From Chrysemys picta bellii (Eukaryota), in the NCBI RefSeq assembly GCF_011386835.1, contig NC_088805.1:28892001-28956000 (forward strand): a stretch of DNA of 64,000 nucleotides, written 5' to 3'. Below, one piece after another: positions 12,860-61,618 of the stretch. Below the pieces are notes generated by a model that was not told the DNA's origin, did no database searches, and saw only the letters and a program-made list of their open reading frames with translations. The position numbers were made by a program, and so were the translations under genes. Numbering within the stretch: position 1 is the first letter of the stretch; every line of letters begins with the position of its first letter.

Positions 12860-13183
12860 NNNNNNNNNNNNNNNNNNNNNNNNNNNNNNNNNNNNNNNNN
12901 NNNNNNNNNNNNNNNNNNNNNNNNNNNNNNNNNNNNNNNNNNNNNNNNNNNNNNNNNNNNNNNNNNNNNNNNNNNNNNNNNNNNNNNNNNNNNNNNNNNN
13001 NNNNNNNNNNNNNNNNNNNNNNNNNNNNNNNNNNNNNNNNNNNNNNNNNNNNNNNNNNNNNNNNNNNNNNNNNNNNNNNNNNNNNNNNNNNNNNNNNNNN
13101 NNNNNNNNNNNNNNNNNNNNNNNNNNNNNNNNNNNNNNNNNNNNNNNNNNNNNNNNNNNNNNNNNNNNNNNNNNNNNNNNNNN
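12860..13183. other. Assembly gap (324 N), probably hiding ATXN2 exon 10
   Basis: Run of N; a minus-strand polypyrimidine tract abuts the right edge; exon 10 not found elsewhere between exons 9 and 11. Confidence 0.85.
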
Positions 13184-28518: not shown

Positions 28519-28712
28519 CACTGCTACCTCGATATAATGCGACCCTATAGAACACGAATTCGGATAGAACGCGGTAAAGCAGTGCTCCGGGGGGGGGGGG
28601 GGGGGGCTGCACACTCCGGTGGATCAAAGCAAGTTCAATATGACGCGGTTTCACGTATAATGCGGTAAGATTTTTTGGCTCCCGAGGACAGCGTTATATC
28701 AAGGTAGAGGTG
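28519..28712. mobile_element. Intact Tc1/mariner-type MITE, same family as the interrupted copy
   Basis: TA on both flanks, imperfect TIRs, shared internal sequence. Confidence 0.88.
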
Positions 28713-31029
28713 TACTTGTGACAAAGGCTATGAATAAGTACAAATAGCTTCATATTTATTTCCTAGTGCATATTCATTTACAGAAGCTAAAAAGGGAAGC
28801 AGCCTCATTGCCTTGAGCTGCCCATTTAGCTTTATTCATCAAGCAGCCCACAGAGTAAGGCCCTAATCCTGCAATGGGATGCCCTAGCCCCAGCCCTTTC
28901 ACCTATGGAGTTCTACTGTAGCCAACAGGAGTCCGCATAGACACAGAAGACCACACAAGCTCATACAGACACAGGTTAAGGCCCATACAGCCTTTTTAAA
29001 AATAAACTGGTAATGAGCCCACTGCAACCAACCTCTTGCCTTTCTTCCCCACTTCAAATTTCTGTAATCTGCAGGCATTCCTCTCCACTGCACAGTCTAA
29101 GACTCAATCATTTTTCCCCTAGCTGCCATGGTCTATTAGAAGATGCAGGATACTAGAATTATTGGGCACTAGTAGTGTACTAGAAAAGAGTTATTTTAAC
29201 AAGTGATCTACTGGCATCACAGGGAAAGTCAGTAGGGAAAGGAAATTGTTATTTGCCAGTGGAGCAGATGGGCTTTTACCAGATAAATTGGAGAGAACCC
29301 TGTAGATGGAAAAAGAGAATATGGTAAGTCTACTCGGACTCTAGCTTTTGCTACTTGTCTAGGCCTTAAAGACTCCACTTATCAAACACCACATCTGCCA
29401 ATGGCAAAGCATTCAGCCAAGGTGACAGTTTCAGGTGGCTCTTTCACTAAGGATTCCCCATTTCCAGGCAAGAAACTTGCATGGCTCCTGCAGAAAGCCT
29501 TGAACAGGACCGGAAATGAACTGAGCTGTCCCATTCTTCCACCTCCAATATCAGCTTGGAGTTGAGTTAGTTTCTGTCCTATCCACTTTGACAGGAAGAA
29601 TCTTCTGTTGGATGACTGGTTTATGACATAGCAGATTTAGGGATAATAGCAAAAGTCTCTTCACCATTCTGAGATCTGTGGACCATGGTCTTCCAGGCTA
29701 CTCCCAGGCTCAAAACCATTGTTTAACTGCACTTCCAGATCACAAAACTCCACAGCAGCAAAACAGAATATGCATGTACAGAGAGAAAAATCCACAGGAT
29801 TGAAGAGGAGACTGGCTTTTACTGAATCAGGATACGGCTACAGAATTTTAGAACTAATACCCCATGACGGGAACATTTGTCTGAAGCACTCCCCAGAAAG
29901 CTATTTGACCCTGAGCATTTTTTTAGACACTACTCTGCTACATGCAAAGGCTTCCAGCTGAGCCTGTCCTGCAACATAGCAGAGATGTCACCTGAATGAA
30001 AGGGCCATTTCTTTAAAAACTGAGCTGCCTTTCACATGCTACTCTGGCCAGACTGTCCACTGACTAATTACTTCACAGCAGAGCTCTCAAGAGCCAGGCA
30101 GAGCTTTACAAACTTTGTTGGCTTCTGGACACGTTCTTTTGAAATCTACAGAATTTAGTTGGCTGTATTTTACATCACACATAGTGTTGTCAAAATTAAC
30201 TAGGCACTACAATGTATCAATTTCCAGTACAAATACTGAAGGAGAACATAGCTCCACCAAGAAACTCTTATAACATGAACCGTTAGCTTTCACTATGAAA
30301 GGAAAGTGCCTGTCTGACACTATAAACCAAGAAAAACCTGAAGTTATTTTTAAAAAACAGATGGCCCATAATTCCTGTATGTTCATAAGCATGCATTACT
30401 CCCTGGGAGTCTATATTTATTATTCATCTACTTATTTCTCAAAGGAGTCTCCTATTTCTTTTAAATTTTCAAGTGTGATCAGAAGGTTCACTTACTCCTA
30501 CAAATACCATCCTGGTACTATTCCTTCTGAGACACCATTGAGAGGATATGAATATTCCACTACAGATCATCATGCATTGCAGCCATCTCTGATCTACCCT
30601 GCTCCAAATCTCTATAGGTTCATCAAAGTTCTCAGAGGTAAACTTTGATCTCCAAGTAGCTGAATCTAGTATTTCCAAAGTTTCTTTATTCTCAAAGAGA
30701 TTCCATCCAATAACCACATGTAGCAGGTGACGTTTTAGTCTGAGGCAGCTGCTCCTCCTAGAATACTTCCTATCAATGAAAGATACCTGGAAGGAGATCG
30801 GGTGGGAGAGAAGTAACAGAATCTACACCTCTCTGCTTACTGCAAGGGTCTGGATTATTAGCCCAACTCTCATTTATGCTAAGGCCATTTTAAACTGATC
30901 TGGAAGAATTTGCACTTAAGTTCTGTACTTCACTGCCCCTTGTGCTTGGACTGTGTACCTTCCCCTAAAAAGGTAGGGTCTTTCAAAAGCCTGGAATCAG
31001 CAAGGCTCTATTTTCAGGATTAACATTAA

Positions 31030-43324: not shown

Positions 43325-45148
43325 CTCAAAGTAGACCCTGATTTAAAAGACTGTTTTAAATAACTTTATCTGAGGACAAAAATATTGATATTTCCTCACA
43401 ACAAAATTTTCCTTTGGATGGTGCCTCCTGATGAGATTGATGCAGCTGTTTATGATTACAGGAGAGATGCAGAATAACTAAATTTATATTTGGATAAAAC
43501 TGAACCGAACATCAAAATACAATTCGAGAATGTTTGGCTAGCATGCTGTAGTTTGTCAGGTCTGTATACAGTGTCTGTATTTTTTGTAATAGTTTTTTAA
43601 GCGGTTGGATGGAGGATACCAACAGCATGCTATGTCCATATATGCCATATTCCACATATACAGACCCTAAATGAGTATGGCATTTAACACATTTGCCCAT
43701 TTGTAAGAGACACATCTGCTTCTTGTAATGCACCTTTTTGAGAGGTTTTGTTTTTTAAATATTCTTACCGAGAGGCTGCTAATCCCCCACCCAAAACACA
43801 CACAAATCTTTCTTATATAAGGGTAGTTATGGCAATCATTAAGCAAGCAAAGCAAGGAAGCATTCCACCCCACTGTCAAAAGAGAAGCAGGTGCTTGTCC
43901 TTACTAATTTCTACAATTATAAATGTTATGCCTCCAATAACTCAAATGAGCTTTATGGACAAATTTCAACTCCTAAAATCTGACTACCCATGCAAAGCAA
44001 CAGCATGTGCATCTCAAGAATGTATTATGCATGTAAACATTATGGAGTGATAAGTAATAAAAGTGTTAGTGTCAATACATTTTTAGTTTGCATTGTTCTT
44101 TTCACCTTAGATCTTTCCCCCCACTTTGTTCTGTTGACTGGTAATAAAATGAAATCCTGCTTTCAGATGTGTCCCACACCAGTTGTCTAGTATATTTTGT
44201 TTTACTGCTAGTACACAGAACTTGAATAAGAGTAGAACTGCCAAACTGGAATGCAATGCAAGAAGGAAAACTTAAATAGCAAGTGCCCTGAGAGACCAGG
44301 AACTCCAAAATGGAAACATTATGCATGATCCCTCAAGGTGTCAGGAGATCCAGGATACCAGAAAGCCTGCATGAGGGGGAGGAGCAGGTGACAGGGGCAA
44401 GCACAACTAAAGAGTGGAACCCGTTTGAACGATGAAGAACTGGGAGCATCTCTTTGCCCTGAGAATCATACCCAATCATGAAGCAAAGGATGGCAGCTCT
44501 GATATAGGGTCAGGAGTAGGGAGCTTACTGCAGGGAGAGTCTCAGTACCATCAGTGGGCACTGAGAACACCTGACACCTCCCACCAGTGAGAAACGGCTT
44601 TACATTACGAACTTGGATGGCATTTCACGACATGAGCAAGTGTGCTCAAAAACCTCATCTCCTCTGCCTGGCTTAACGTTAATCATCTTCACCTGCATTG
44701 ACTGCCTTGGATACTTTAGGCCGTGCCCCTAGCAGGCGACCCGGCGGGGACGAGCCGCCTACTGCGGTGCCAGCCCCGGGGCTGGAGCAGACTCACCACG
44801 CGGGTCTCAATAAAACGCCTATTTCGAAAATAAAATGGTCACCTCTGTGCCGGCTGCGGGCAGGGCGCCCATTCGCTGGGCCGGGGCCTCCTTCCCCCAC
44901 CCCCGCAGGTGGGGGTTTAGTCCCCTCCTCCCGCAATCGGGACCCGCCCGCCGGCAAAGCGATCCCCGAGCCCCCACCCGGCACCCTCCGGCCCTAGGCC
45001 GCACGCCTGGAGCCCGCCCCCGGCCCCACGAGCGTCCTTCGCGAGCCGGCCTTGGCTCTGCTGCAGCCTCGGCCTGGGAAACCGAGGCCTAGCAGCGGCT
45101 GCTCCTCTGCGGAGCCACCAGCCCCCGAGTCGGCTGCCCCTCCCCGGG

Positions 45149-45965
45149 GCCCCTTCACCCCCCCCCCCGCGATGCCAGGCCCAGCCCCCCGCAGGGCCGG
45201 TGCCCCTTCACCCTCCCCCCCCGCGATGCCAGCCCCAGCCCCCCCGCAGGGCCGGTGCCCCCTCACCCTCCCCCCCCGCGATGCCAGGCCCAGCCCCCCA
45301 CAGGGCCGGTGCCCCTTCACCCCCCCCCGCGATGCCAGGCCCAGCCCCCCGCAGGGCCGGTGCCCCTTCACCCCCCCCCCCGCGATACCAGCCCCAGCCC
45401 CCCGCAGGGCCAGTGCCCCTTCACCCTCCCCCCCCGCGATGCCAGCCCCAGCCCCCCGCAGGGCCGGTGCCCCTTCACCCTCCCCCCCCGCGATGCCAGG
45501 CCCAGCCCCCCCGCAGGGCCGGTGCCCCTTCACCCCCCCGCGATGCCAGGCCCAGCCCCCCGCAGGGCCAGTGCCCCTTCACCCCCCCCCGCGATGCCAG
45601 CCCCAGCCCCCCGCAGGGCCGGTGCCCCTTCACCCTCCCCCCCGCGATGCCAGGCCCAGCCCCCCGCAGGGCCGGTGCCCCTTCACCCTCCCCCCACCGC
45701 GATGCCAGGCCCAGCCCCCCGCAGGGCCGGTGCCCCTTCACCCTCCCCCCAACCCCCACCGCGATGCCAGGCCCAGCCCCCCGCAGGGCCGGTGCCCCTT
45801 CACCCTCCCCCCCCGCGATGCCAGGCCCAGCCCCCCTCCAGGACCGGGTGGCCCTTCACCCCCCCGCGATGCCAGGCCCAGCCCCCCCTCCAGGACCGGG
45901 TGGCCCTTCACCCCCCCCCCCGCGATGCCAGGCCCAGCCCCCCCGGGCCGGGTGCCCCTTCACCC
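45149..45965. repeat. GC-rich minisatellite, about 15 units of about 54 bp, in ATXN2 intron 1
   Basis: Unit gccccttcaccc(t)c(n)gcgatgccaggcccagcc(n)gcagggccggt; 15 gatgcc/gatacc cores counted. Confidence 0.95.
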
Positions 45966-46172
45966 TGCTCGGCATCTCCCGCGGACTAGACCCACCCAAT
46001 CGCTCCGCTCCGCAGCCTGCCATAGGCCGGAGCGGCCTAGCAGGGAAAGGGAATCAGCGCCCGGCCCGCGCCGCGTCCTCTGTCGCCCCCCCTCCCCCCA
46101 GGCCCGGGGGCCGCTGAAGGCCCGCGCGGCAGCGCTGCTCTGAGGCCCGGTCTCCCCGCGCCCCAGACCCAC

Positions 46173-46324
46173 CTGCCCATGTTCTGCCGGCCGCCGCCGC
46201 CGCCTCCTCCCCCCGCTGCTGCCGGGATGCCGGGGCCGCCGCTGCCGCCGCCGCCGGGGGGTTTGCGGTTGTTGCCGGCGGCCTGGGCCGCCGCCTGCTG
46301 CTGCTGCTGCTGCTTGAGGGACAT
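46173..46324 (-). CDS. ATXN2: Ataxin-2 exon 1 (coding part): MSLK-QQQQQQ-AAAQAAGNNRKPPGGG...RQNMG(R)
   Basis: ATG in TTCGCCATGT context, MSLK followed by polyQ as in human ATXN2, donor AG|GTGGGT; 152 nt, ends in phase 2. Confidence 0.93.
46295..46312 (-). repeat. (CAG)6 uninterrupted polyQ tract of ATXN2
   Basis: Plus strand reads (ctg)6. Confidence 0.97.
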
Positions 46325-49300
46325 GGCGAAGGGGCCGGGCCGGGTGCGCGCCGGGGCCTGCTGCGCTCGCTCGCTCGCTGCTCCGGAGCCGCCGCTGTCT
46401 CGGCCGGTTGCTCCCAAACAGTGTGAGCCGGGCCGGGGAGGGAGGGGGAGCGCGCGGGCAGCGGGGCGCGGAGGGATCCGGCGGGGGGAGGGGAGGCGCG
46501 CTGCGTACCTGCCCGCCCAGCCCTGCCCGCCGCCTGACAGCGCCCCGCCGGGCGGCCGCGCCCAGCCCCGCGGCCCGCGGGACCCGGCCGGGGGCGTTCG
46601 GGAGCCCGGCTCCGCTCCGCTCCGCCGCCGGGAGCCTCTCCGCGGCCGGACTCTTTACGGGAAGTCGGAAGGGTCTGAGCGGGGATGCGGCAGGTGAAGG
46701 GGCGGCCGGGGAGCGAGCGCCGGCCGGGACACGTGAGGCGGCCGGGGACGGGCCCAGGGACACCGGCCTCACCCCACCCTCTGCGGGGAGGTGGCGCCGC
46801 ACGGCCGCGCCGGCACCAACGCCACAGGGCGGGCTCCCGGCCTGGGAGATGCTGCGTCCCGCCTGGCTGCGCTGGCTCCTTCCCTGCCGGGCGGTGCGGC
46901 CGGCCCAGCCCCAGCGCTCTTCCGCGCCGCTGGAGGGGAGCTCGGCCCGGCCCGACCTCCAGCTGCGCCGGGCAAGTGGAGGCAGCTGCACGGGCTCCTA
47001 CCACCGCTCTGCGGTGGGGCGCTGGGCCCCCAACAGCTCTCCCTGCTCCAGGGACAAACCCTGCTTCAGGGCAGCTGAGCGCTCAGTGGAGCCCCCTGGG
47101 AGTTACCCGGGAGCCTGGCACCACAAAGCTGCTCTCTGCCAAGTTACCTCCCCTGCTCCCCAGCTTACTGTCCACTCCTCTCCGCTGCTGTCTGCTGCCG
47201 CTCTGGGTAACTTTTTGGGTTGTAGCTGTTTGGGGCCCACTCCCACAACAGGATCCGCTAGCAGCGACTTCTGCACGCTCCTGGGACCTGGCAGACTTCA
47301 CTGAGGCAGAGCAGGCCCCTGATTGTAGGCTTAGGGCATTAGATTGTAAAAAAAAAAAAAAGTTGTGGGGCACAGACCTCCAGGTTTGTAATGCACAGTG
47401 TGCAGAGGGGGCTGTGTGTTATTTCAAGTTTATGAAAATGATATGCCCCTCCTCCCATAAATTAACAAATGTTAAAGGACTGCTAATAGATCAAAAATTA
47501 TGGGAACTGGTGGTTAACAATTGTATTGTGCTTTACATCTTCAAATCACCTTTGCAAACATTCTTAACACTCCTGTGAGGAAGATAAATATTCCTGTTTT
47601 ACCCAAGGAAAACTGAGACGGAGGTTAAGCCTTTTACTAGTTCTAGATACATAATTGACCTCAGTTAACATTTTTTACATTTGAAATTTAAAAATCTTTG
47701 CTTCCCTCTTTGTTGGAGAACATAGGCATGCAGTTGACCCCAGAGCTGTAACATTCCCTAATCTCTCTAAAGTTTAGAAAACCATTTCCTTCCTCTGGAG
47801 GAGGAAGTGAGGCAGCTCAGTTGTGTATGACATCACTCTTCAGATCCTCCACCAGAGAAGGAAATAAGGATCTAACATTTATATAAAAGACATTTAAAAA
47901 AAAAAAAAAACCTCAAGCCTGTCTGCATCACAGAAAAGTAGTAAAGGAACAAATCGGATAAAGTTTGGCTTTGCATTTCACCTTTAAAAAGACTTATCCA
48001 AGGCTACACTGAGTTTTTTAATTTCAGTCCACTTAACCAAATTGCCCTAGCGACCAAACAAAAAAACAACCTCAAATCATATATGCAAACTTCTAAACAA
48101 GTAGTTGAGAATTTTCTGAGGAATCAGTGGCCCTTTAAATGTAGATTTATCACATAACATCAGTAACTGATTACAGCATTAGTTTTGAATTTAAACAGCT
48201 GAAATGGATCCCACAGGGTTATCACATTGTTTTGCCAACTCCCTCAGTACTTAAGATTCCTAATTTCTTAAAAATGCAATTTAAGACATTCAAAGAAAAA
48301 CTTTACACAATTAATGTTGGATTGCCGTAATTGGCAGAAGCCAGAACATACTGTAAGTGCTGAAATGCCAACAAACCCTGGTTGCAAGATATTTTATTAA
48401 TGTATAGTGTTGAATATCATCCAATTTTAAGCACTGAGTTTTAACTTTAGCGCTCTTTGAGGTGTTCCTTGTACCTGTTACTTTATTCTACTTGTCATTT
48501 CCAGAGGGACCAAAGTGCAACCAATTCATTCTAATATGTAAAAATAAAATCTGGACTGGCCTGCTAAAAGTCTGTCATGTACATAATTAGCATGAGCAGA
48601 TGGAATTTCAAAACCAGGAGAATAAATTGATTTATAACCATGGTTACTCAAAATTCTTGAGGCTAGTCTATTCATAGAAACTCTCTAGGAATCCCAGAGA
48701 ATGTAAGTGTAATAAAAACAAATGATGCTGGTAGGCAGGCATTATTTATACACCTTGCTTGTAAAGCAAGTTTTCCCATAGGTTTAGCGGAGTTGTGGGT
48801 GGTAAAACACAATGGTAAGAAACAGCAATATTTAACAGTTTCTTAAATTAGCATTTCCCCCACATTTGTGCACTTTTGGCTGCTAAGTTTCTTGTTTTGT
48901 TTTATCTTACAGGCCTGAATAATGATGTGGTGACACATTATTGGCTGGGTGACAGTAGATGCCAACTGAAGTGGACACAGAAGAAAGAATTCTTTATATT
49001 TAATTGGAAATGCTTGCACTGTGAGGAGCCAGAAATGTAAAGCTCTCTTTTTTCTCCCCTTTTTAGTAAATTTTGTGGCCAACTAGTGATTTCATAACCA
49101 CAGGAATTGAAAGCCATGGACATCAAGTATTCATGCAGTTCGTGGAAGAGACTTCTGTGTGCACAGAGTTGGAGACCGCTAAAGTTACCCCTGGCACAGG
49201 TTTCAATGATATTTGCAGGAAAATTAGTCTTATGCCAAAATGCTGTAACCCACCTGGTGCCTGCTGCTAGAGATGATCTTGAGCCTTAAATAATGAAAAA

Positions 49301-51590: not shown

Positions 51591-53237
51591 AGCTTGTTTC
51601 AAGGCATATTTGGGATCTTTCAAAGTAGTTGGAGCTGGAAAGGATTGTGTCTAGTGACATGTACCAATGTGCCCCAAATTTAAAGGAAATGACAAGATAC
51701 AATTAAAGCAAGTAAAACTGACAACATACAATGATTATTCAATAGTTTTTTGCATATTAAATTTTAATTCTAGAAAAATATTTTAAATAAGAAGATACTA
51801 TCAGTTTGATATGCAGGTACTAAAGAGTTACTATCGGATCCAGAAACAAAATGTCAGTAGCGTGATCTGGCATGCATAAGATTGACAGAATGATAGTCCT
51901 TGCAGTTCAGAAACGCTGGAATGAGTACACTTGGGATGCATTGCCATAGGCTGCTTCCAAGAGATGTAGTATGAACACACATTTAAACAAGTTTTCTTTA
52001 ACATTTGTATAAAAACAGTCTCTTGTTAATGCCTGGTATAGCAAACTGGGTGTTAAGTGATTGATGTCTACTACAGTTCCTCAGTGACTGCCTTTAAGGA
52101 CATTGGGCCCATAATAGAAAAGCTAAAAACCACTTAGGAGAGAGATATACACTCTCTCAATCCCACACCTTTCTGCCAACTTCTAGTGCTTAGTACATCA
52201 TTTTTTTTATGTTCTGCCTATCCCGCTTCTGTGATGTTTGTTTCCTCTCCCTTGCATACTCATCTCTCTAGTCACTTTGCAGTTTGGCTCTGTTGATCTA
52301 GGAGTTTTGCCTCTACTCTTTCTAGTGACATCTGCAAGTTTAATCACAAGTGAACGTGTGCCAAAGCAGCACTTACGTCAAGAGAGAGGAGACAGCCAAT
52401 TAGTTTAATCAAAAAAGTTTCTATAAATCTTCATGGCCAAATTCAGACCAACTAGGATTAAAAAAGGGCACACGCTACACAGCATCTAATGTTTATCACC
52501 TGGATGTTTTCTATAGAATGCAGTTTAAGAACCATTGTTTTCAGGGCATACTACAAATCCCTTTTATTTTTGTCGGCCTTCCCTTGACTTGTTTTTCCCT
52601 TTCCACGCTAATCTTTGCACCAGCAAACGAAGTGTTCTCTTTTGTTGGTGGGGTGGTCTGCTGATGGTTATTGGGTTTGCCTTTGTGCCAAATGCAGCTG
52701 GCATTATCCCAACTGTGTAGTTCAGTTGTTTGTATCTAGGTGGGTTTTTAATACTTTGCCTTTGGATACCTTCAGCAGGCACCTTATAAACTAGACAATC
52801 CAGCATGACTGATTTATCTACAGGTTTAGCAAGGGGAAGGATCAGGATTCAAGAAGTTTTCAAAGAACAACTATTTTTGATAAAGAATTATCTTATTTTA
52901 CAGCAATTGATGGGTCTGAGGCTCTCATTAATTCAATCTCTGATCATTCTTTACATGGCATTGTTCTCTTGCTGGAACCATTAAGGATGGGGACCATATT
53001 TAACAAGGTGATGCACACATGCCTGTGATGACGCAGCTGACAGTAACACTCTGCTTTTATATAAAAAAATGCTAACAGCTTAAATCCCTAATTATAATAG
53101 TAGTTGATCTTTAACAAAAATATTCAGAAAAAGACTAAGTAATTTCTTTCCCATAGTCATAGTCCTACTTTTGGACACAAACATTTTAATTCTCTGTTCA
53201 AGCATATAAGTCCCTCTAGCAAACAAAGAGAAAAGTA

Positions 53238-53361
53238 CACCTCTACCCCGATATAATGTGACCTGATACAACACGAATTTGGATATAATGCGGTAAAGCA
53301 GCGCTCCGGGGGGGCAGGGCTGCGCACTCCGGTGGATCAAAGCAAGTTTGATATAACGCGG
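53238..53361. mobile_element. Left half of a Tc1/mariner-type MITE interrupted by the Gypsy element
   Basis: TA followed by TIR CACCTCTACCCCGATA; homologous to the intact copy at 28519-28712. Confidence 0.88.
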
Positions 53362-54441
53362 TGTGACAATGCGGATCTGGCGGAACCCAACTGAGAGTGC
53401 CAACTCAGGACAAATTGCTCAAACAGGGCAGTTACAGCCCAAGGCTGGGGTTTCTTCCACCTCTAAGGCAAACCAAACCAGCCAGACTAGGAGGACTTCG
53501 GTCTCACCCCCTGGCTAACCGCAAGTCTCACAAGCAATCTCCTTAGACACCCCAGTTTCCCAGTATACCACCAGTGCCACTCGTTATGGGGACAAATGGT
53601 TATGAAAACCAATACCCCAGTAAGAAAAAGGTTCTCCTGATCCCAAAGGACCAAGCCCCAGACCCAGGTCAATATACAAGTTAGATCTTACCCACAAATC
53701 ACGCTGTTGCCAATCCTTTAGAATCTAAAATCTAAAGGTTTATTCATAAAAGGAAAAAGATAGAGACGAGAGTTAGAATTGGTTAAATGGAATCAATTAC
53801 ATACAGTAATGGCAAAGTTCTTGGTTCAGGCTTGCAGCAGCGATGGAATAAACTGCAGGTTCAAATCAAGTCTCTGGAACATCCCCCGCTGGGATGGGTC
53901 CTCAGTCCTTTGTTCAAAGCTTCAGCCTGTAGCAAAGTCCCTCCAGAGGTAAGAAGCAGGATTGAAGACAAGATGGAGATGAGGCATCAGCCTTATATAG
54001 TCTTTTCCAGGTGTAAGAACAGCAAATGGAGTCTGGAGTCACATGGGCCAGTCCCTGCATACTTTGCTGAGTTACAAGGCGTATCTGCCTTCTCTCAATG
54101 GGTCCATTGTATAGCTGATGGTCCTTTAATGGGCCATCAAGCAGGCTAGGCAGAGCTAACACCATGTTGTCTGGGATGTCACCCAGCAGCATAGCCTAAG
54201 TTTGAAATACAGACAGTATAGAGCCAGCCTAAGTTTGAAATACAGACAGTATAGAGCCAATATTCCTAACTTCAACTACAAAATTGATACATACATATAG
54301 ACCGCATAATTATAACCAGTAAACCATAACCTTGTCTTAGACACCCCATTTGACCCCCTTTACACAAGATCTGGGTGCCACTACAGGACCTTGGTTGCAA
54401 CAATGATCTATATGGTCCCAGAGTATATCAATAACGTCACA
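53362..54441 (-). repeat. 3' LTR (1080 bp); minus-strand TATATAA at 53993-53999 and AATAAA at 53739-53744
   Basis: Direct repeat of 59208-60287; preceded on the minus strand by a short G-run (putative PPT). Confidence 0.97.
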
Positions 54442-54496
54442 CCCCCAACGCAAAATTGATGCAGGAAGGGATGTCACAAACACCACTGACTGCATC

Positions 54497-57400
54497 CTAA
54501 GAGCTCTCCACTCTGGACAATGCATCAGCTACAATATTTTCCTTTCCCCTTATGTGGACTATATCCATTTCATACTCCTGAAGGGCTAAACTCCAACGCA
54601 GCAACCTGGAGTTGTTGCCCTTGGCCCTGTGCAGCCAGACCAGAGGGGCATGATCACTCAACACAGTGAATTTTTTATTGTACAAATAGGGCTTAAGTTG
54701 CTTGACAGCCCAGACAATGGCGTAACATTCCTTTTCAATGGTAGCGTAATTTTGCTCAGTGGGGGACAATTTCTTACTTAGATATGCCACGGGATGTCTC
54801 TTCCCTCCTTCCCCCTCTTGCATTAGCACCGCCCCCAGCCCAATATTGGAAGCGTCTGTACATAATAAAAAGGGCTTTTCAAAATCTGGGCTGGCCAAAA
54901 CAGGCTCCTTGGCCAAAGCGCTCTTTATGCTTTGAAAACCCTGCTCACAGGCCTCCGTCCATAGCACCCGGTCTGGTTTTTCCTTTTTCGTCAGGTCTGT
55001 GATGGGAGCAACAATGTCGCTGAATCCCTGCACAAATCTCCTGTAATAGTTGGCCAGACCAATGAAGGATTGGACCTGCTTTTTAGTTCTAGGGGTTGGC
55101 CAGTTTTTAATGGCCTCTACCTTTACAGGCTCTGGGCGCAGTTGCCCATTGCCCACCCTGTGCCCCAGGTAGGTCACCTCAGCAGCTCCCATTCTGCATT
55201 TAGAAACCTTAACCGTTAGATTGGCCTCCCTGAGCCGGTGCAGCACAATCCCTATGTGGTTCAGGTGATCTTGCCACGAACTGCTGAATACGGCCAGGTC
55301 GTCTATATAGGCCCTCGCAAAAGATTCTAATCCCCGTAGGACCTCATTTATAAGTCTCATGAACGTAGCCCCTGAATTTCGCATCACAAAGGGCAGCACT
55401 TTGAACTCATATAGGCCCGATTCCACTATGAAAGCGGATTTTCCTTGTGCCTCGGCATCTAGGGGTATTTGCCAGTACCCCTTAGTCAGGTCCAGGGTGC
55501 TTATAAACCTTGCCCCTCCCAGCGTATCCAGTAGATCCTCTATTCTGGGTGTGGGGTAAGGGTCAGGCTGGGTGATAGCATTTAGCTTCCTGTAATCCAC
55601 ACAAAACCTCATGGTCTTATCCTTTTTTGGCACCATCACAATGGGAGAGGCCCAGGGGCTCTGGGATCTGGTGATTATTCCCATTGTCAACATGCTCTCC
55701 ACCTCTTCCTGGATCTGTCTTTGCATCTCTCCCTTGGCCCTGTAAGCTCTGCTAGGGGCTGGGCGGGGACCCACCGTCTGAATGGAGTGTGTCATCCTAT
55801 CTGTGAGCCCTGGCCTATTGGAGAATGTTTGCTTGTGGTGTTTTAACAGCCTCAGCAGTTCCTTTCTTTGAGGGGGGGTTAAATCCTCCCCCATCTCAAT
55901 GCTCTCAAGAGGCGTCTCCTCCTGGCTTTCAGCAACCATGTCAATTAAAGGGGCAGATCCTGCCTCTTCCTCAGCATAACAGATTGTGTTCACATTTACC
56001 TCCCTTGCATGGTAGGCCTTCATTCTGTTCACATGCACTGTCTGCACACTTCCCTGGACCTGGGGCTTCCTCACATCATAGGTAACCTCATTAATCCTTT
56101 CCACTACCTCCATGGGTCCAGACCAAACATCTTTCATTTTGTTCTTCCTGACAGGATCTAGCACCAACACCATGTCCCCTATTTCAAACGCTCTCTCTTT
56201 AGCATCTCTGTCATACCAGGCTTTCTGCGTATCCTGGCTCTCTTTCAGATTCTGCTCAACCAACTTCATCATCTCCTGCAAACTCTCCTTGAATTGAGCC
56301 ACATACTCGGCCACCGGCTGCTCTGCCTCCTCCACATTACCTTCCCACGAGTCACGAACCAAATCTAGGGGCCCCCGGACCTGCCTCCCATAGAGCAGTT
56401 CAAAGGGAGCAAACCCTGTAGACTCTTGGGGCACACTCCTGTATGCATACAATAGATACGGCAGCATAACATCCCAGTCATTCTGGCGTCTATCCACATA
56501 CATTTTCAACATAGACTTCAGGGTTCCATTGAACCTCTCCACTAGACCATTAGTCTGGGGGTGGTAGGGAGCAGCTTTCAGGTGCTTCACCCCACATAAC
56601 TCCCACAACTGTTTGAAAACCACAGACATAAAGTTAGATCCACGGTCAGACAATATTTCCTTGGGAAAACCCACTCTGCTGAAAATAGAGAACAAGGCCA
56701 CTGCCACTGTCTCTGCCTCGATATTAGCCAAGGCTATAGCCTCCGGATATCTGGTAGCAAAATCTACCAACACCAGGATGTATTTCTTCCCATTTCTGGA
56801 AGGTTTAGGGAGTGGCCCCACAATATCCACAGCTACTCTGGCAAAAGCTTCCCCAATAATGGGCAGAGGCTGGAGGGGCACCTTGCTAGGCCCCCTTAAC
56901 CCCTTACGCTTCTGGCACAGCTCACAGCTCCTGCAGTAATCTCTCACCGACCCAAAAAGGTGAGGCCAGTAGAAATTCTGCTCTAGCCTGTCACACGTTT
57001 TGCCTACACCCAGATGTCCTGCAAAGGGACTATCATGAGCCAACTTCAACAAATCATTGCGGTAACTCTCAGGTACCACAAGCTGTTTGCGAGCTGTTGC
57101 TTGGGAATTCTTCCTTCCCCTAGGTGGTTCCCTATACAACAGCCCATCCTGCATAAAAAACCTGCCTCTCTCTTCACAGGCTGGGACCTGATTCTGAGCA
57201 TCATTCCTGGCCCTCTCTAGAGATACATCACTCTGCTGAGCCACAATGAATTCACTCTGGGTTTTGTTTGGATTCAGAATCATCTCTGATATTTCAGATA
57301 AACCCTCACCTGATCCATCTTGAGAGGCACTCTCTGTCTGGTTGCTGCCCCCCTCACTGCCATCAGTCCGGGTATCTGCCACAGCCCCAAATTCTTTCTG

Positions 57401-59089
57401 TGACCTGGTCACTACATTAACTTGGCCAGGCACCGCCAATATGTTATTTCCTACCAACACATCAGCCGGAATCAAATCCCGGACAGCAGCCTTCACATCC
57501 CCTTTAAAGCCATCCCACTCCAGGTGGATTCTAGCCATCGGCAGGTTCACCGAATACTCGGATAACGCCACTACCGTCACATACTCCCCCGGCAGCATGT
57601 CCTCCGGCTTCACCAGATGTCCCTTGACTATAGTTACATCCGAGCCAGTGTCTCGCCATCCCGTGCATTCAACATCATTGACCTTTGCCTCCATGATAAA
57701 CCTCTCACTCCCCTGCCATGCCTCAGTCCTGACATAACTGGTGAGCTTATCACCTCCTCCCATGCCACTGGAGACGATGGGGTTAACATTAGCTACTGCT
57801 GTGCTTGCACCTGAACTTAAGGTGGAGCTGTTGTGGCTTGGTTCAGCCTGAGTGCTCAGGGTAATGGAGTTGGCGTTTATCGTGGCATTTGGGGTTGCTG
57901 GCTTTGGGCTGCCCTTCAGGGTCGGGCAATCTGGTCTCATGTGGCCCAGCATACCACAGTGATAGCATGTAATCTGTTCCGTCCTGGGATGAGAGTTCCT
58001 ACCCTCCGGGCCCCCTTGAACTCCTCTAGAAGAGTCAGGGACAGATTTACTTTTAAATCCCTCCCTCCTCTTGAACTGGGGAGAATGGTGATTAGTTTTC
58101 CCCGGGGTTTTACACCCTTCTCGAGCCCTGTTTTGGGTATGGGCATCCGCAATCTCTGCTGCCCGTAGGACTGACTCAGGGTCCCTGTCACACACAGCTG
58201 CTCTCACATGGTCAGGCACAATATCTAAGAACTGTTCCAAAGTTATTAAATCCAGCAGTTTTTCAAAACTCCCATGAACCTTGGCTCCCACAACCCACTT
58301 TTTAACAAAACCCATCAGCTTATGAGCACATTCTACAAAAGTACAATCCTTAGGCATTTTAAACTCTCTAAACTTAACTCTGTAAGATTCAGGAGTAACC
58401 TTGAATCGCCTTAACACAGAATCTTTAAACTGCCCATAATCCAAGGCTTCTTGTTCCCCCAAGTCATTAAATACCTCCCTGGCTTTTCCAGTCAGTCTGG
58501 TCAGCAGGACAGGCATTCGCTGACCCTCAGGGATCTGGTACAGGTTGCAGAGGCGTTCAAAGGTAGACAAAAACTCCTCTATATCCTCAGTATCGTTGTA
58601 AATGGGACACATCCTTTCCCAGTTTTTCTCATGGCGTGGGGGAAGTGGAGTACCAGGTGGGGATGACTTTCTCCGCTCTTCCAGTACTTGGAGCTGAAGT
58701 CTGGCCGTCTCCTGTTCCATCTTGTGAGTCTCCTGCTCCATCCTGTGAGTCTCCTGCTCAGCAGCGAGCAGCTCTAGACGTCCCTTACGAGCTCTCTCTT
58801 CTCTCTCACTTTCCAATTCTGCTATTTTTTGCTTCTCCAGCAATCGAAGATCTGCTAGCTTCTGTTCATGCTCAAATTGCAGTTGACTTGTCACCCTTTG
58901 CATTCTAATTTTTTCTGCCTCTTCTGCAGCCTCAGGTAAGGGCTGTGCTCTTGCCCCCTGATCACTGGCTATTAACAGATTTCTCAGTTCCTGATTTGTA
59001 GCTTTCTTTCTAAAGCTTATCCTCTTTTCTGAACACAAATTTTCCAGGGCTTTTTTGCCAAGTCCCTCATATGCTCTTTGCTCAGCCAT
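54497..59089 (-). CDS. Gag-Pol polyprotein, 1530 aa: coiled coil, SCAN-like capsid, CCHC knuckle, aspartic protease (DTG), integrase (HHCC + DDE), RT (YIDD), RNase H
   Basis: Uninterrupted ORF; motifs CYHCGMLGHMRPDC, WRDTGS, HDSPFAGH..CRSCELC, VDIVGP, SDRGSNF, ERFNGTL, YIDD, TDAS..GLGAVL, ADALSR. Confidence 0.97.
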   Translation of the reverse strand: MAEQRAYEGLGKKALENLCSEKRISFRKKATNQELRNLLIASDQGARAQPLPEAAEEAEKIRMQRVTSQLQFEHEQKLADLRLLEKQKIAELESEREERARKGRLELLAAEQETHRMEQETHKMEQETARLQLQVLEERRKSSPPGTPLPPRHEKNWERMCPIYNDTEDIEEFLSTFERLCNLYQIPEGQRMPVLLTRLTGKAREVFNDLGEQEALDYGQFKDSVLRRFKVTPESYRVKFREFKMPKDCTFVECAHKLMGFVKKWVVGAKVHGSFEKLLDLITLEQFLDIVPDHVRAAVCDRDPESVLRAAEIADAHTQNRAREGCKTPGKTNHHSPQFKRREGFKSKSVPDSSRGVQGGPEGRNSHPRTEQITCYHCGMLGHMRPDCPTLKGSPKPATPNATINANSITLSTQAEPSHNSSTLSSGASTAVANVNPIVSSGMGGGDKLTSYVRTEAWQGSERFIMEAKVNDVECTGWRDTGSDVTIVKGHLVKPEDMLPGEYVTVVALSEYSVNLPMARIHLEWDGFKGDVKAAVRDLIPADVLVGNNILAVPGQVNVVTRSQKEFGAVADTRTDGSEGGSNQTESASQDGSGEGLSEISEMILNPNKTQSEFIVAQQSDVSLERARNDAQNQVPACEERGRFFMQDGLLYREPPRGRKNSQATARKQLVVPESYRNDLLKLAHDSPFAGHLGVGKTCDRLEQNFYWPHLFGSVRDYCRSCELCQKRKGLRGPSKVPLQPLPIIGEAFARVAVDIVGPLPKPSRNGKKYILVLVDFATRYPEAIALANIEAETVAVALFSIFSRVGFPKEILSDRGSNFMSVVFKQLWELCGVKHLKAAPYHPQTNGLVERFNGTLKSMLKMYVDRRQNDWDVMLPYLLYAYRSVPQESTGFAPFELLYGRQVRGPLDLVRDSWEGNVEEAEQPVAEYVAQFKESLQEMMKLVEQNLKESQDTQKAWYDRDAKERAFEIGDMVLVLDPVRKNKMKDVWSGPMEVVERINEVTYDVRKPQVQGSVQTVHVNRMKAYHAREVNVNTICYAEEEAGSAPLIDMVAESQEETPLESIEMGEDLTPPQRKELLRLLKHHKQTFSNRPGLTDRMTHSIQTVGPRPAPSRAYRAKGEMQRQIQEEVESMLTMGIITRSQSPWASPIVMVPKKDKTMRFCVDYRKLNAITQPDPYPTPRIEDLLDTLGGARFISTLDLTKGYWQIPLDAEAQGKSAFIVESGLYEFKVLPFVMRNSGATFMRLINEVLRGLESFARAYIDDLAVFSSSWQDHLNHIGIVLHRLREANLTVKVSKCRMGAAEVTYLGHRVGNGQLRPEPVKVEAIKNWPTPRTKKQVQSFIGLANYYRRFVQGFSDIVAPITDLTKKEKPDRVLWTEACEQGFQSIKSALAKEPVLASPDFEKPFLLCTDASNIGLGAVLMQEGEGGKRHPVAYLSKKLSPTEQNYATIEKECYAIVWAVKQLKPYLYNKKFTVLSDHAPLVWLHRAKGNNSRLLRWSLALQEYEMDIVHIRGKENIVADALSRVESS

Positions 59090-59195
59090 TGCAGCAGCTC
59101 TTTAACCAACAAAACTCTCAATCCCAAAATTCAAATTTGGACAGCGCGGGGTTCTGACCCAAAGCTTAATTGACCTGGTTCTGTGGATCCAAGCA

Positions 59196-59206
59196 CGACT
59201 ACGCCA
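59196..59206 (-). other. Primer-binding site TGGCGTAGTCG, complementary to the 3' end of tRNA-Ser
   Basis: 1 nt after the 5' LTR; matches 11 nt of the recalled vertebrate tRNA-Ser 3' end (...CGACTACGCCA). Confidence 0.8.
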
Positions 59207-59207
59207 C

Positions 59208-60287
59208 TGTGACAATGCGGATCTGGCGGAACCCAACTGAGAGTGCCAACTCAGGACAAATTGCTCAAACAGGGCAGTTACAGCCCAAGGCTGGGGTTTC
59301 TTCCACCTCTAAGGCAAACCAAACCAGCCAGACTAGGAGGACTTCGGTCTCACCCCCTGGCTAACCGCAAGTCTCACAAGCAATCTCCTTAGACACCCCA
59401 GTTTCCCAGTATACCACCAGTGCCACTCGTTATGGGGACAAATGGTTATGAAAACCAATACCCCAGTAAGAAAAAGGTTCTCCTGATCCCAAAGGACCAA
59501 GCCCCAGACCCAGGTCAATATACAAGTTAGATCTTACCCACAAATCACGCTGTTGCCAATCCTTTAGAATCTAAAATCTAAAGGTTTATTCATAAAAGGA
59601 AAAAGATAGAGACGAGAGTTAGAATTGGTTAAATGGAATCAATTACATACAGTAATGGCAAAGTTCTTGGTTCAGGCTTGCAGCAGCGATGGAATAAACT
59701 GCAGGTTCAAATCAAGTCTCTGGAACATCCCCCGCTGGGATGGGTCCTCAGTCCTTTGTTCAAAGCTTCAGCCTGTAGCAAAGTCCCTCCAGAGGTAAGA
59801 AGCAGGATTGAAGACAAGATGGAGATGAGGCATCAGCCTTATATAGTCTTTTCCAGGTGTAAGAACAGCAAATGGAGTCTGGAGTCACATGGGCCAGTCC
59901 CTGCATACTTTGCTGAGTTACAAGGCGTATCTGCCTTCTCTCAATGGGTCCATTGTATAGCTGATGGTCCTTTAATGGGCCATCAAGCAGGCTAGGCAGA
60001 GCTAACACCATGTTGTCTGGGATGTCACCCAGCAGCATAGCCTAAGTTTGAAATACAGACAGTATAGAGCCAGCCTAAGTTTGAAATACAGACAGTATAG
60101 AGCCAATATTCCTAACTTCAACTACAAAATTGATACATACATATAGACCGCATAATTATAACCAGTAAACCATAACCTTGTCTTAGACACCCCATTTGAC
60201 CCCCTTTACACAAGATCTGGGTGCCACTACAGGACCTTGGTTGCGACAATGATCTATATGGTCCCAGAGTATATCAATAACGTCACA
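59208..60287 (-). repeat. 5' LTR (1080 bp)
   Basis: Direct repeat of 53362-54441; one mismatch seen by eye (60245 G vs 54399 A). Confidence 0.97.
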
Positions 60288-60339
60288 CGCGGTAAGATTT
60301 TTTGGCTCCCGAGGATAGCGTTCTATCGGGGTAGAGGTG
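60288..60339. mobile_element. Right half of the interrupted Tc1/mariner-type MITE
   Basis: Ends TATCGGGGTAGAGGTG followed by TA. Confidence 0.88.
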
Positions 60340-60491
60340 TATATCCAGCAAGAAGACTAGCCAGTGAATCTAGTGTTTATTTTACATGAGGAACATCCCT
60401 CCCAAACCTGAATAAGATACCTACACAACAATGAACAAAAACAAAGCTATGTTTTAGAATTGGCAGGTGAGAAACTTCTATCTTTGACTCC

Positions 60492-60684
60492 TGTGGGTGA
60501 GAGAGAAAAGCTTTCCAGCCACACACAGCTCTTCAGGTCTGGGAAAGGTACTCCTAGAGCTGAAGAGCTGTGAGGCTTGAAAGCTTGTCTCTCTCACCAA
60601 CAGAAGTTGGTCCAATAAAGGTTATCTCACCCACCTTGTCTCTAATATCCTGGGACTGAGGCAGCTACAGCTGCACTGCATACA
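60492..60684. mobile_element. Penelope-like inverted-repeat remnant (second family) with 13-bp TSD
   Basis: tatctttgactcc at 60479-60491 and 60685-60697; internal inverted repeat. Confidence 0.8.
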
Positions 60685-60800
60685 TATCTTTGACTCCTTC
60701 ATTCTCTTTCCTCCCCCTCCCACCCCCCCATTGCCATATAGTATCTCATTGCTTGGAATTCCGTAAGTGGTTTACTAACTCCCACAGTGTACATTTCTTG

Positions 60801-61057
60801 AGGTATGTCTACACTATCATTTTTGTAATTCTTTCTTATGGTTGAACTACCATCAGTGCAGTTCCACTAATCATTGGAAATGGCGGAAGTACTCATGTGG
60901 ACCAGCCACCAGCGTTTAAAACCACCATGATGTCCTCCAGCTCAAAGGAGATGTAGGTGACAAAGATTAAAATGCCAGTGCCTAGTCTAAACTAGCATTT
61001 TAACTGTTGCTGCCACCAGTGGGCGATTTTAAGAAAAATGTTAATGTAGATAAGGCC
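60801..61057. mobile_element. Harbinger/PIF-like MITE
   Basis: TIRs plus ttg/ttg 3-bp TSD. Confidence 0.72.
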
Positions 61058-61618
61058 TTGAACAAAAGCTACAGAGTGACAAGCTTATTTTGCCAGCTAC
61101 AACCTCCCCCCCCCTTTTTTTTTTTGTTTTTTAATTAAAGTTAATCTCAGGAATGGACCATTTAAAGGAGCATGTTTTCTAGGAGGTGATTGTGGTCCAG
61201 CAGGGAGAGCACTAGGAGTCTGATCCGATTGTCATTAGAAAAAAAGGTGGAAAGACTTCCATTAATTTTAGTGCAAATTGAATTGGGCATAGGACTACAA
61301 ATCAGAAGATCTTGGGACTACTCCCAACTCTGCCAAGCAATTCACTGTTCACCCTTGGGCATGTCACTTCACCATCATTACTAACCCTTCTTCATAAAAG
61401 CGTTTTGATTAGCTACAGATAAAAAAAAATCTCAAGTATTATTACTAGAAGGTAGCAGTAGGTAAAGCAACAATTATTGCAAAGCTTATCTCCAGTATAG
61501 TTCTATAGGCATCATGATCTCAACACTTCTACAGAGCACGTGTGCATCTCAATGTAGATGACAGAGCCTCCTAACCTAGTCATGACTGCAATCCCACACC
61601 CCCGAAAGCAGTTACATA

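What the first reader, a model, noticed from the sequence alone, without database searches (positions are those of the whole stretch)
53362..60287. Very young, structurally complete Gmr1-type Gypsy element 7 kb upstream of ATXN2
Seen: 1080-bp LTRs differ at only one position (CpG vs CpA, 60245 vs 54399), PBS present, and one unbroken 1530-aa ORF. Integrase (aa ~685-1025) lies before RT (YIDD aa 1261-1264) and RNase H. Known: PR-IN-RT-RH order in a Gypsy-like element defines the Gmr1-like clade; ordinary Gypsy elements have PR-RT-RH-IN. Inference: a recent insertion, possibly polymorphic, from a family that may still be active in this turtle lineage.
Basis: partly seen in the sequence, partly recalled or inferred. 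Interest (0 to 1): 0.75.

Follow-up and report, generated by a model that had tools for sequence, protein, structure and literature searches.

The report
Young intact Gmr1-like turtle retrotransposon
This is a complete, recently inserted copy of a Gmr1-like "jumping gene" about 7 kb upstream of the painted turtle's ATXN2 gene; the kind is already known in turtles, and the useful extra is that its family looks like the working helper of a far more numerous stripped-down relative.

Summary
Window 53362-60287 is a 6,926-bp LTR retrotransposon on the minus strand, the same orientation as ATXN2.

- **Structure:** two 1,080-bp LTRs differ at one CpG site. There is a 5-bp target duplication (CGCGG), an 11-nt primer site complementary to tRNA-Ser, and one unbroken 1,530-aa ORF.
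- **Classification:** the order is Gag (SCAN-like capsid, CCHC), protease, integrase, RT, RNase H. The RT/RNase H is Ty3/gypsy-type, and integrase comes before RT. That is the Gmr1-like arrangement.
- **Species and copies:** the nearest proteins are from Chrysemys picta bellii (seven loci at 97-99.8% identity) and one from Mauremys mutica.
- **Novelty:** Gmr1-like elements, including full-length ones, are already reported in turtles, so this is a new member of a known kind.

1. This copy has one private substitution at a nearly invariant RT position.
2. It sits inside a ~177-bp MITE-like repeat.
3. Its LTR, 5' UTR and gag are shared at 95% or more with a much more abundant form that switches to a different sequence just after gag. 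This scan has already noted such ~4-kb non-autonomous Gmr1-like elements at other loci of this genome, so this family is probably their autonomous helper.

Polymorphism of the insertion could not be tested.

The parts
53357..53361 (.). Left copy of the 5-bp target-site duplication (CGCGG)
   Evidence: the uninterrupted paralogous repeat at 28517-28714 has a single copy of this pentamer position
53362..54441 (-). 3' LTR in the element's sense, 1,080 bp, TG...CA
   Evidence: identical to 59208-60287 except at 54399
54442..54446 (-). Short G-run (GGGGG) directly upstream of the 3' LTR; the polypurine-tract position
   Evidence: position only, function inferred
54497..59089 (-). Single Gag-PR-IN-RT-RNase H ORF, 1,530 aa plus TAG stop
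57881..59089 (-). Gag (aa 1-403): coiled-coil N-terminus, SCAN-like capsid C-terminal domain (58124-58393), CCHC knuckle (57923-57970). This module is shared with the abundant non-autonomous form.
   Evidence: Pfam SCAN E 2.2e-13 and zf-CCHC; 94% aa identity to P0129 up to about aa 405; depth step and loose ends at 57881
57425..57697 (-). Putative retropepsin-type protease (aa ~465-555); D-T-G at aa 480-482 (57644-57652)
   Evidence: Motif seen; D/T/G is the majority residue in aligned relatives; Atlas feature search returns only aspartyl-protease clusters at 0.85-0.90. Pfam finds nothing, so this is inferred.
56009..57076 (-). Integrase (aa 672-1027): HHCC zinc domain, DDE core (D755, D815, E851), SH3-like C-terminus
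   Evidence: Pfam; residues invariant in 126-127 of 127 relatives
55154..55633 (-). Reverse transcriptase (aa 1153-1312), YIDD at 1261-1264
   Evidence: Pfam RVT_1 E 2.8e-31; Ty3 RT 4ol8 E 9.3e-90
55385..55387 (-). Codon 1235 in RT motif B: the only amino-acid position where this copy differs from all seven C. picta copies
   Evidence: all 8 family members agree with each other and with 125 of 126 aligned relatives; the window copy alone differs
54572..54961 (-). RNase H (aa 1377-1506); D1412, E1454, D1479, D1522 present
   Evidence: Pfam RT_RNaseH E 1.2e-41; conservation
59196..59206 (-). Primer-binding site, 11 nt, complementary to the 3' end of tRNA-Ser(AGA/UGA)
   Evidence: sequence against the tRNA sequences printed in PMC10359600. 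Those are mammalian tRNAs; the turtle tRNA was not checked.
59208..60287 (-). 5' LTR in the element's sense. TATA-like box 59839-59845, AATAAA 59585-59590, perfect 33-bp tandem duplication in U3 at 60039-60105.
   Evidence: promoter and poly(A) signals read by eye, so inferred
60288..60292 (.). Right copy of the target-site duplication (CGCGG)
53237..53361 (.). Left part of the ~177-bp TIR-bounded MITE-like host repeat into which the element inserted (the right part is 60293-60341)
   Evidence: 18-20-bp terminal inverted repeats; a 79%-identical uninterrupted paralog at 28517-28714 reads straight through the insertion point

Best explanation
Window 53362-60287 is a recently integrated, structurally complete copy of an autonomous-type Gmr1-like Ty3/gypsy LTR retrotransposon of the painted turtle lineage. 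It lies on the minus strand, inside a small MITE-like repeat about 7 kb upstream of ATXN2.

Inferred life cycle: the 5' LTR (TATA-like box, AATAAA) gives a genomic RNA. One ORF yields Gag (SCAN-like capsid plus zinc knuckle), protease, integrase, RT and RNase H. tRNA-Ser primes minus-strand synthesis at the PBS. Integrase makes the 5-bp duplication.

The family has a few dozen near-identical pol-bearing copies and has evolved under purifying selection, so it was active within roughly the last million years or so. This copy carries one private substitution at a near-invariant RT position. It may therefore not supply working RT itself, although its cis sequences are intact.

Its LTR, 5' UTR and gag module is shared with a far more numerous form that has a different sequence after gag. 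This family is most likely the autonomous helper of that non-autonomous population. The confidence given applies to the identity and youth of the element; the helper relation alone I put at about 0.5.
For: Shown directly:
- LTR pair with 1 mismatch, TSD, ORF and domain order.
- Ty3-type RT and integrase.
- PBS complementary to tRNA-Ser.
- Insertion boundaries confirmed by an uninterrupted paralog of the host repeat.
- All PR, IN, RT and RNase H catalytic residues are present.

Family:
- Seven C. picta bellii loci at 97-99.8% aa identity, plus Mauremys mutica at 91%.
- Per-contig k-mer depth of pol contigs is about 25-50 times that of the unique flank in three DNA runs (rough).
- Of 36 listed ORF differences between this copy and the family's contigs, 21 are synonymous against 22-30% expected (p 2.6e-6 to 3.8e-4).
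- In the RT-RNase H tree the copy nests in a turtle clade. All 44 integrase-first elements lie on one side of a branch with SH-aLRT 100, against 9 RT-first elements.

Helper link:
- Contig depth rises about 10-fold at 57881, which is aa ~403 at the end of gag, in all three DNA runs.
- The loose end at that point encodes the peptide found in P0129.
- P0129 is 94% identical to this gag but only 36% identical downstream.

An RNA-library run holds a pol contig with 1 mismatch in 203, plus gag and LTR contigs.
Against: - The empty or filled state in other animals was not resolved. All runs were contigs and the immediate flank is itself a high-copy repeat.
- Depth from contigs is explicitly not a copy number (tool warning).
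- RNA contigs cannot be assigned to a copy and may include DNA carry-over.
- The private change in RT motif B argues against this copy being an active source.
- Protease has no Pfam match.
- The type element Gmr1 was not in the tree.
LTR sharing with the non-autonomous form therefore rests on depth and on one RNA contig spanning LTR, PBS and 5' UTR.
Confidence: 0.85

Rival explanations
1. The insertion is fixed and several million years old rather than very recent. The near-identical LTRs reflect the slow turtle clock, or gene conversion between the LTRs.
For: Turtles evolve at about one third of the human rate (PMC4054807). With one difference, the Poisson 95% range reaches about 5-10 My. No empty allele was seen (uninformative).
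Against: The only LTR difference is at a hypermutable CpG. The ORF has one private amino-acid change. The closest other copy differs by 3 aa in 1,530. Other notes of this scan report polymorphic young Gmr1-like and DIRS copies in the same genome (unchecked).
Confidence: 0.2
2. Assembly artefact: a high-copy family was collapsed or patched, so the identical LTRs and the open frame reflect a consensus-like assembly and not a real single copy.
For: The LTR is extremely high-copy in the read contigs. The window contains an N gap at 12860-13183, so the assembly is scaffolded.
Against: Exact TSD within a repeat whose paralog confirms the joint. One LTR difference and a private RT substitution not seen in any other copy. 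The whole ORF is colinear with independent gene models at 97-99.8%.
Confidence: 0.05
3. It is a Ty1/copia-type element, which normally has integrase before RT, and not a gypsy-type Gmr1-like element.
For: The domain order PR-IN-RT-RH is the copia order.
Against: Pfam gives RVT_1, RT_RNaseH, Integrase_H2C2 and the Tf2/p58-type integrase C-terminus, not RVT_2. The best solved relatives are Ty3 Gag-Pol and Ty3 RT. Relatives with the same order span sponges to vertebrates and form one group.
Confidence: 0.01
4. It is a domesticated host gene of Gmr1 origin (GIN1, SCAND3 or KRBA2 type) and not a mobile element.
For: Databases name some relatives 'Gypsy retrotransposon integrase-like protein 1' or 'SCAN box domain-containing protein'.
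Against: LTRs, TSD, PBS, multiple near-identical copies on different chromosomes, and a full set of enzymatic domains.
Confidence: 0.01

Closest known systems
Gmr1 (Gadus morhua) and the Gmr1-like clade of Ty3/gypsy elements, including the SCAN-bearing Gmr1-like elements of Anolis and other vertebrates (Goodwin & Poulter 2002 and Emerson & Thomas 2011 as cited in PMC8220671 and bioRxiv 10.1101/2025.03.03.638093; PMC3670739 for turtles)
   Same: Gypsy-type RT/RNase H with integrase upstream of RT; SCAN-like capsid C-terminal domain followed by PR, IN and RT-RH; no env; LTRs with a short TSD.
   Different: A painted-turtle family only about 50% identical to the next Gmr1-like lineage in the same genome (P0002). 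Its relation to the cod type element was not tested directly.
MusD/ETn of mouse and plant pairs such as BARE-1/BARE-2 or RIRE2/Dasheng: an autonomous LTR element that mobilises a more numerous non-autonomous relative sharing its LTRs (from my own knowledge)
   Same: A few dozen pol-bearing copies against hundreds of copies that share the LTR and 5' region but have a different interior. The shared module ends at a sharp breakpoint.
   Different: Here the non-autonomous form keeps its own open gag and a protease-like region. That form is old, being shared with Caretta. Trans-mobilisation is inferred, not shown.
Ty3 of yeast (PDB 7q5b, 4ol8)
   Same: Closest solved RT/RNase H and integrase by sequence.
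   Different: Ty3 has RT-RH before IN, whereas this element has IN before RT-RH. Ty3 Gag has no SCAN-type Pfam match.
Ty1/copia (Pseudoviridae)
   Same: PR-IN-RT-RH order.
   Different: Different RT family (RVT_2), which was not matched here.

Membership tests
Gmr1-like clade of Ty3/gypsy (Metaviridae) | LTR retrotransposon architecture: direct LTRs with TG..CA ends, TSD, PBS and a PPT position | tested here: met
Gmr1-like clade of Ty3/gypsy (Metaviridae) | RT/RNase H and integrase of the Ty3/gypsy type | tested here: met
   Pfam RVT_1, RT_RNaseH, Integrase_H2C2 and Integrase_p58_C; Ty3 Gag-Pol 7q5b E 1.3e-129
Gmr1-like clade of Ty3/gypsy (Metaviridae) | Integrase encoded upstream of RT (PR-IN-RT-RH) | tested here: met
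   IN at aa 672-1027, RT at 1153-1312, RH at 1377-1506. Definition quoted from PMC8220671 and bioRxiv 10.1101/2025.03.03.638093.
Gmr1-like clade of Ty3/gypsy (Metaviridae) | SCAN-like capsid C-terminal domain in Gag | tested here: met
   Pfam SCAN, 50.2 bits against a cut-off of 27
Gmr1-like clade of Ty3/gypsy (Metaviridae) | RT groups phylogenetically with the type element Gmr1 | tested here: inconclusive
   The RT-RH groups with 44 integrase-first elements (turtles, alligator, lizard, frogs, urchins, amphioxus, sponges) against 9 RT-first arthropod elements, SH-aLRT 100. The cod Gmr1 sequence and the other reference clades were not available.
Autonomous (self-sufficient) element | All catalytic and near-invariant residues of PR, IN, RT and RNase H intact | tested here: not met
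   Catalytic residues are all present, but aa 1235 in RT motif B differs from 125 of 126 relatives and from every other family copy. The effect on activity was not tested.
Currently segregating (polymorphic) insertion | Empty allele present in some individuals | tested here: inconclusive
   Only contigs were available. The 55 bp next to the LTR are a high-copy repeat and unique contigs stop 30 bases into it.
Ty1/copia (Pseudoviridae) | RVT_2-type RT | tested here: not met
   No RVT_2 match; RVT_1 at E 2.8e-31
Helper of a non-autonomous family (MusD/ETn-like relation) | Shared LTR and 5' module with a more numerous form that lacks RT and IN | tested here: inconclusive
   Depth step and loose end at 57881 in three DNA runs. 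P0129 is 94% identical in gag and 36% after it. The full DNA of the other form was not available, and its lack of RT/IN is known only from unchecked scan notes.

The most novel reading that the evidence does not exclude
The family of this copy is the live autonomous helper of a still-expanding population of hundreds of gag-encoding, pol-less Gmr1-like elements in the painted turtle. The LTR, 5' UTR and gag module is repeatedly exchanged between helper and parasite by recombination, with the breakpoint just after the zinc knuckle at about aa 405. That would be a reptile counterpart of MusD/ETn in which the parasite keeps its own capsid gene, and the partnership would pre-date the split of pond and sea turtles.
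Probability: 0.4. Interest if true: 0.55.

Novelty: new member of a known kind. Interest (0 to 1): 0.35.

Why it matters
Gmr1-like elements are the source of the vertebrate SCAN domain and of genes such as GIN1 and SCAND3. Mammals and birds have lost the mobile forms.

A copy this young in a slowly evolving amniote shows that an autonomous lineage with a SCAN-type capsid was mobile very recently. It gives a concrete reference for the enzymatic partner of the many short Gmr1-like elements seen elsewhere in this genome. It also offers a possible presence/absence marker for painted-turtle populations.

Its 3' LTR points toward the ATXN2 promoter 7 kb away, so an effect on ATXN2 transcription is conceivable but untested.

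None of this changes what is known about the kind.

Tried and rejected
I could not fetch the DNA of the other copies, compare their LTR pairs, or check whether any lies at the ATXN2 locus.
- **Read laying** (5,991 letters, within the operators' limit) returned only contigs. The junction at 60287/60288 and any empty allele could not be read, because 60288-60342 is a high-copy MITE and the listing is truncated. The joints listed around 60342-60590 have 21-25-letter sides in repeats, and I treat them as chance.
- **Protease:** Pfam finds no protease even at E 10. A single-sequence AlphaFold model of aa 440-600 was useless (pLDDT 35), so no fold search was run.
- **Loose end at 57881:** its 30-nt consensus has no match in the window. 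It made sense only after translation and comparison with P0129.
- **Other blanks:** ARAGORN found no tRNA in the window. Rfam found nothing in 52000-61500. A look-up of earlier findings by sequence was blank, which per the operators means nothing. Emerson & Thomas 2011 (PMC3209298) is not held and is cited only through other papers.
- **Searches not run:** the costly representative-protein search and the third word search were not needed. The metagenome and genome collections were not searched, because they do not hold turtle genomes.
- **Considered and rejected:** copia-type element, domesticated gene, assembly artefact (see rivals).
Full report
**The observation.** The two LTRs are 53362-54441 and 59208-60287. 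Each is 1,080 bp, starts with TG and ends with CA. They differ only at 54399 (A) versus 60245 (G), where the right LTR has a CpG. A perfect 5-bp duplication, CGCGG, flanks them at 53357-53361 and 60288-60292.

The only ORF of 150 aa or more is 54497-59089 on the minus strand, 1,530 aa with no stop. The element therefore reads right to left, in the same direction as ATXN2. The ATXN2 exon-1 polyQ ORF is at 46037-46417 on the minus strand, about 7 kb from the element's near end.

**Anatomy.** Pfam gives these domains:
- SCAN, aa 233-322
- zf-CCHC, aa 374-389
- Integrase_H2C2, aa 672-729
- rve, aa 751-844
- integrase C-terminal SH3, aa 981-1027
- RVT_1, aa 1153-1312
- RT_RNaseH, aa 1377-1506

A D-T-G-S motif at aa 480-483 marks the expected protease. 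Pfam does not detect a protease. A language-model feature search returns only retroviral-type aspartyl protease clusters, at 0.85-0.90, so the protease is inferred.

One base after the 5' LTR lies TGGCGTAGTCG (59206-59196). It is the exact complement of the last 11 nt of tRNA-Ser(AGA/UGA) as printed in PMC10359600. A short G-run sits directly before the 3' LTR.

The LTR holds a TATA-like box, an AATAAA and a perfect 33-bp tandem duplication in U3. The roles of these three features are inferred.

These residues are all present and near-invariant among 126-127 aligned relatives:
- Integrase: HHCC and D755/D815/E851
- RT: D1165 and YIDD
- RNase H: D1412/E1454/D1479/D1522

**The insertion site.** The flanks 53237-53361 and 60293-60341 together form a ~177-bp repeat with 18-20-bp terminal inverted repeats. 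A 79%-identical, uninterrupted copy at 28517-28714 reads straight through the joint with a single copy of the duplicated pentamer position. This independently fixes the element's ends and the TSD.

**Classification.** The closest solved proteins are Ty3 Gag-Pol (7q5b, E 1.3e-129) and Ty3 RT/RNase H (4ol8). There is no copia-type RVT_2 match. Integrase upstream of RT in a gypsy-type element is the published hallmark of Gmr1 elements (PMC8220671). SCAN followed by PR, IN and RT-RH is the layout used to call Gmr1-like elements in 68 vertebrate genomes (bioRxiv 10.1101/2025.03.03.638093).

Most of the 128 proteins retrieved, from turtles to sponges, have the same integrase-first order. Several pseudoscorpion proteins have the usual RT-first order.

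In a quick maximum-likelihood RT-RNase H tree, the 44 integrase-first rows and the 9 RT-first rows are split by a branch with SH-aLRT 100. The window nests in a turtle clade, within sauropsids, within tetrapods. The cod type element was not available, so that membership row stays inconclusive.

**Species and family.** The best hit is Chrysemys picta bellii LOC135981218. Its 90% cluster holds seven C. picta bellii loci on different chromosomes and one Mauremys mutica protein. Identity to the window ORF is 97-99.8% for the C. picta copies and 91% for Mauremys. The window's exact protein is not in the collection. The next lineage, also in C. picta, is only about 50% identical.

**Age.** One difference in 1,080 bp gives K = 9.3e-4. 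Shaffer et al. put the turtle rate at about one third of the human rate (PMC4054807). Taking that as about 0.3-1e-9 per site per year (the human figure is from my own knowledge), the point estimate is about 0.5-1.5 My. The Poisson range runs from tens of thousands of years to several My. The one change is at a hypermutable CpG, which favours the young end.

The element's CpG observed/expected ratio is 0.28, similar to the neighbouring host DNA at 0.33. That fits long vertical residence of the lineage.

**Reads.** Runs under five organism labels hold 0.60-0.66 of the sampled words. RNA-library runs hold 0.05-0.14. I laid three DNA runs and one RNA run on 54800-60790. All were contigs.

The junction could not be read. 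The 55 bp outside the LTR belong to the MITE, and unique contigs start 30 bases inside it, at 60313, 60312 and 60298.

Per-contig k-mer depths were as follows. The tool warns that contig depth is not a copy number, so these ratios are rough.

| Region | X1 | X3 | X5 | Ratio to unique flank |
|---|---|---|---|---|
| Unique flank | ~15 | ~5 | ~9 | 1 |
| pol contigs (54800-57930) | 410-590 | 110-150 | 410-520 | about 25-50 |
| Gag and 5' UTR contigs | ~4,600 | ~500 | ~4,400 | hundreds |

The summed LTR depth is higher again, by more than tenfold.

The RNA-library run has one pol contig (55551-55753, 1 mismatch in 203) and gag, 5' UTR and LTR contigs. This shows presence in an RNA library. It does not prove transcription of this copy.

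**Selection.** Of the 36 best-supported ORF differences between this copy and the family contigs, 21 are synonymous and 15 are not. About 22% synonymous would be expected for random changes (p 2.6e-6, or 3.8e-4 if 30% is assumed). The lineages separating family members were therefore under purifying selection, as expected for elements that had to function in order to spread.

**This copy.** Across the whole ORF there is exactly one position where the window differs from all seven C. picta copies: aa 1235 (codon 55385-55387), in RT motif B. All eight family members and 125 of 126 aligned relatives carry one and the same other residue there. The ORF is unbroken, but this copy's RT may well be impaired. 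Its LTRs, PBS and other cis parts are intact, so other copies could still mobilise it. I deliberately do not spell out the reverse change.

**The abundant relative.** The depth step falls at 57881, which is aa ~403, just after the zinc knuckle. The loose end there translates to a peptide absent from the window.

A gag-only search found P0129 (C. picta bellii, 513 aa). P0129 contains that very peptide. It is 94% identical to this gag (aa 63-403) and only 36% identical afterwards, with D-T-A in place of D-T-G in the protease-like part.

Two Caretta caretta proteins (P0130, P0131) share the P0129-type tail and are 83-84% identical in gag. That form is therefore old.

Earlier notes of this scan describe many very young ~4.0-4.1-kb non-autonomous Gmr1-like elements in this same genome, with an open SCAN-Gag-protease ORF and no RT, RNase H or integrase core. 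Those notes are unchecked. None that I retrieved describes an intact autonomous copy.

My reading, at about 0.5 confidence: the window's family supplies RT and integrase for that population, and the LTR-gag module has been exchanged between the two by recombination.

**What is known.** Full-length Gmr1 lineages in turtles were reported in 2013 (PMC3670739). [quoted passage not shown] This finding is therefore a well-preserved new member of a known kind. Its interest lies in its youth and in the probable helper role of its family.

Noticed in passing
window 57881 (breakpoint); 57881-60287 compared with 54800-57880: Contig k-mer depth jumps about 10-fold at the end of gag and again at the LTR in three DNA runs. 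The abundant form continues with a different, P0129-type sequence after an 87-bp in-frame gap relative to this copy.
   Followed up: partly
P0129 (C. picta), P0130 and P0131 (Caretta caretta): Gag-plus-protease-like proteins whose post-gag tail is shared between a pond turtle and a sea turtle. The protease-like part has D-T-A (P0129) or D-P-A (P0131) in place of D-T-G. The non-autonomous lineage seems to pre-date the split of these families.
   Followed up: partly
window 53237-53361 + 60293-60341, and 28517-28714: A ~177-198-bp MITE-like repeat with terminal inverted repeats beginning ACACCTCTACC. One copy hosts the retrotransposon; another lies in an ATXN2 intron. It is high-copy in the read contigs.
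   Followed up: partly
window 60580-60650: A very high-copy SINE-like segment in the right flank. Many contigs end or diverge at 60619.
   Followed up: no
window 58707-58759: A 21-bp repeat (2.5 copies) in gag encodes the repeated EQETH(R/K)M peptide. Family copies and P0129 differ here by 7-aa and 14-aa indels.
   Followed up: partly
window 60039-60105 and 54193-54259: A perfect 33-bp tandem duplication in the U3 part of both LTRs, possibly an enhancer repeat.
   Followed up: no
window 44994-46150: A GC-rich (about 65%) tandemly repetitive stretch beside ATXN2 exon 1 gives long proline/alanine-rich ORFs on both strands. It is probably a minisatellite in the CpG island.
   Followed up: no
Read-laying runs X1, X3, X5: The two runs whose flank is identical to the window (X1, X5) have majority pol contigs about 1% different from this copy. 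The run with flank indels (X3) has majority pol contigs only 0.1-0.3% different. The dominant subfamily may differ between these animals.
   Followed up: no
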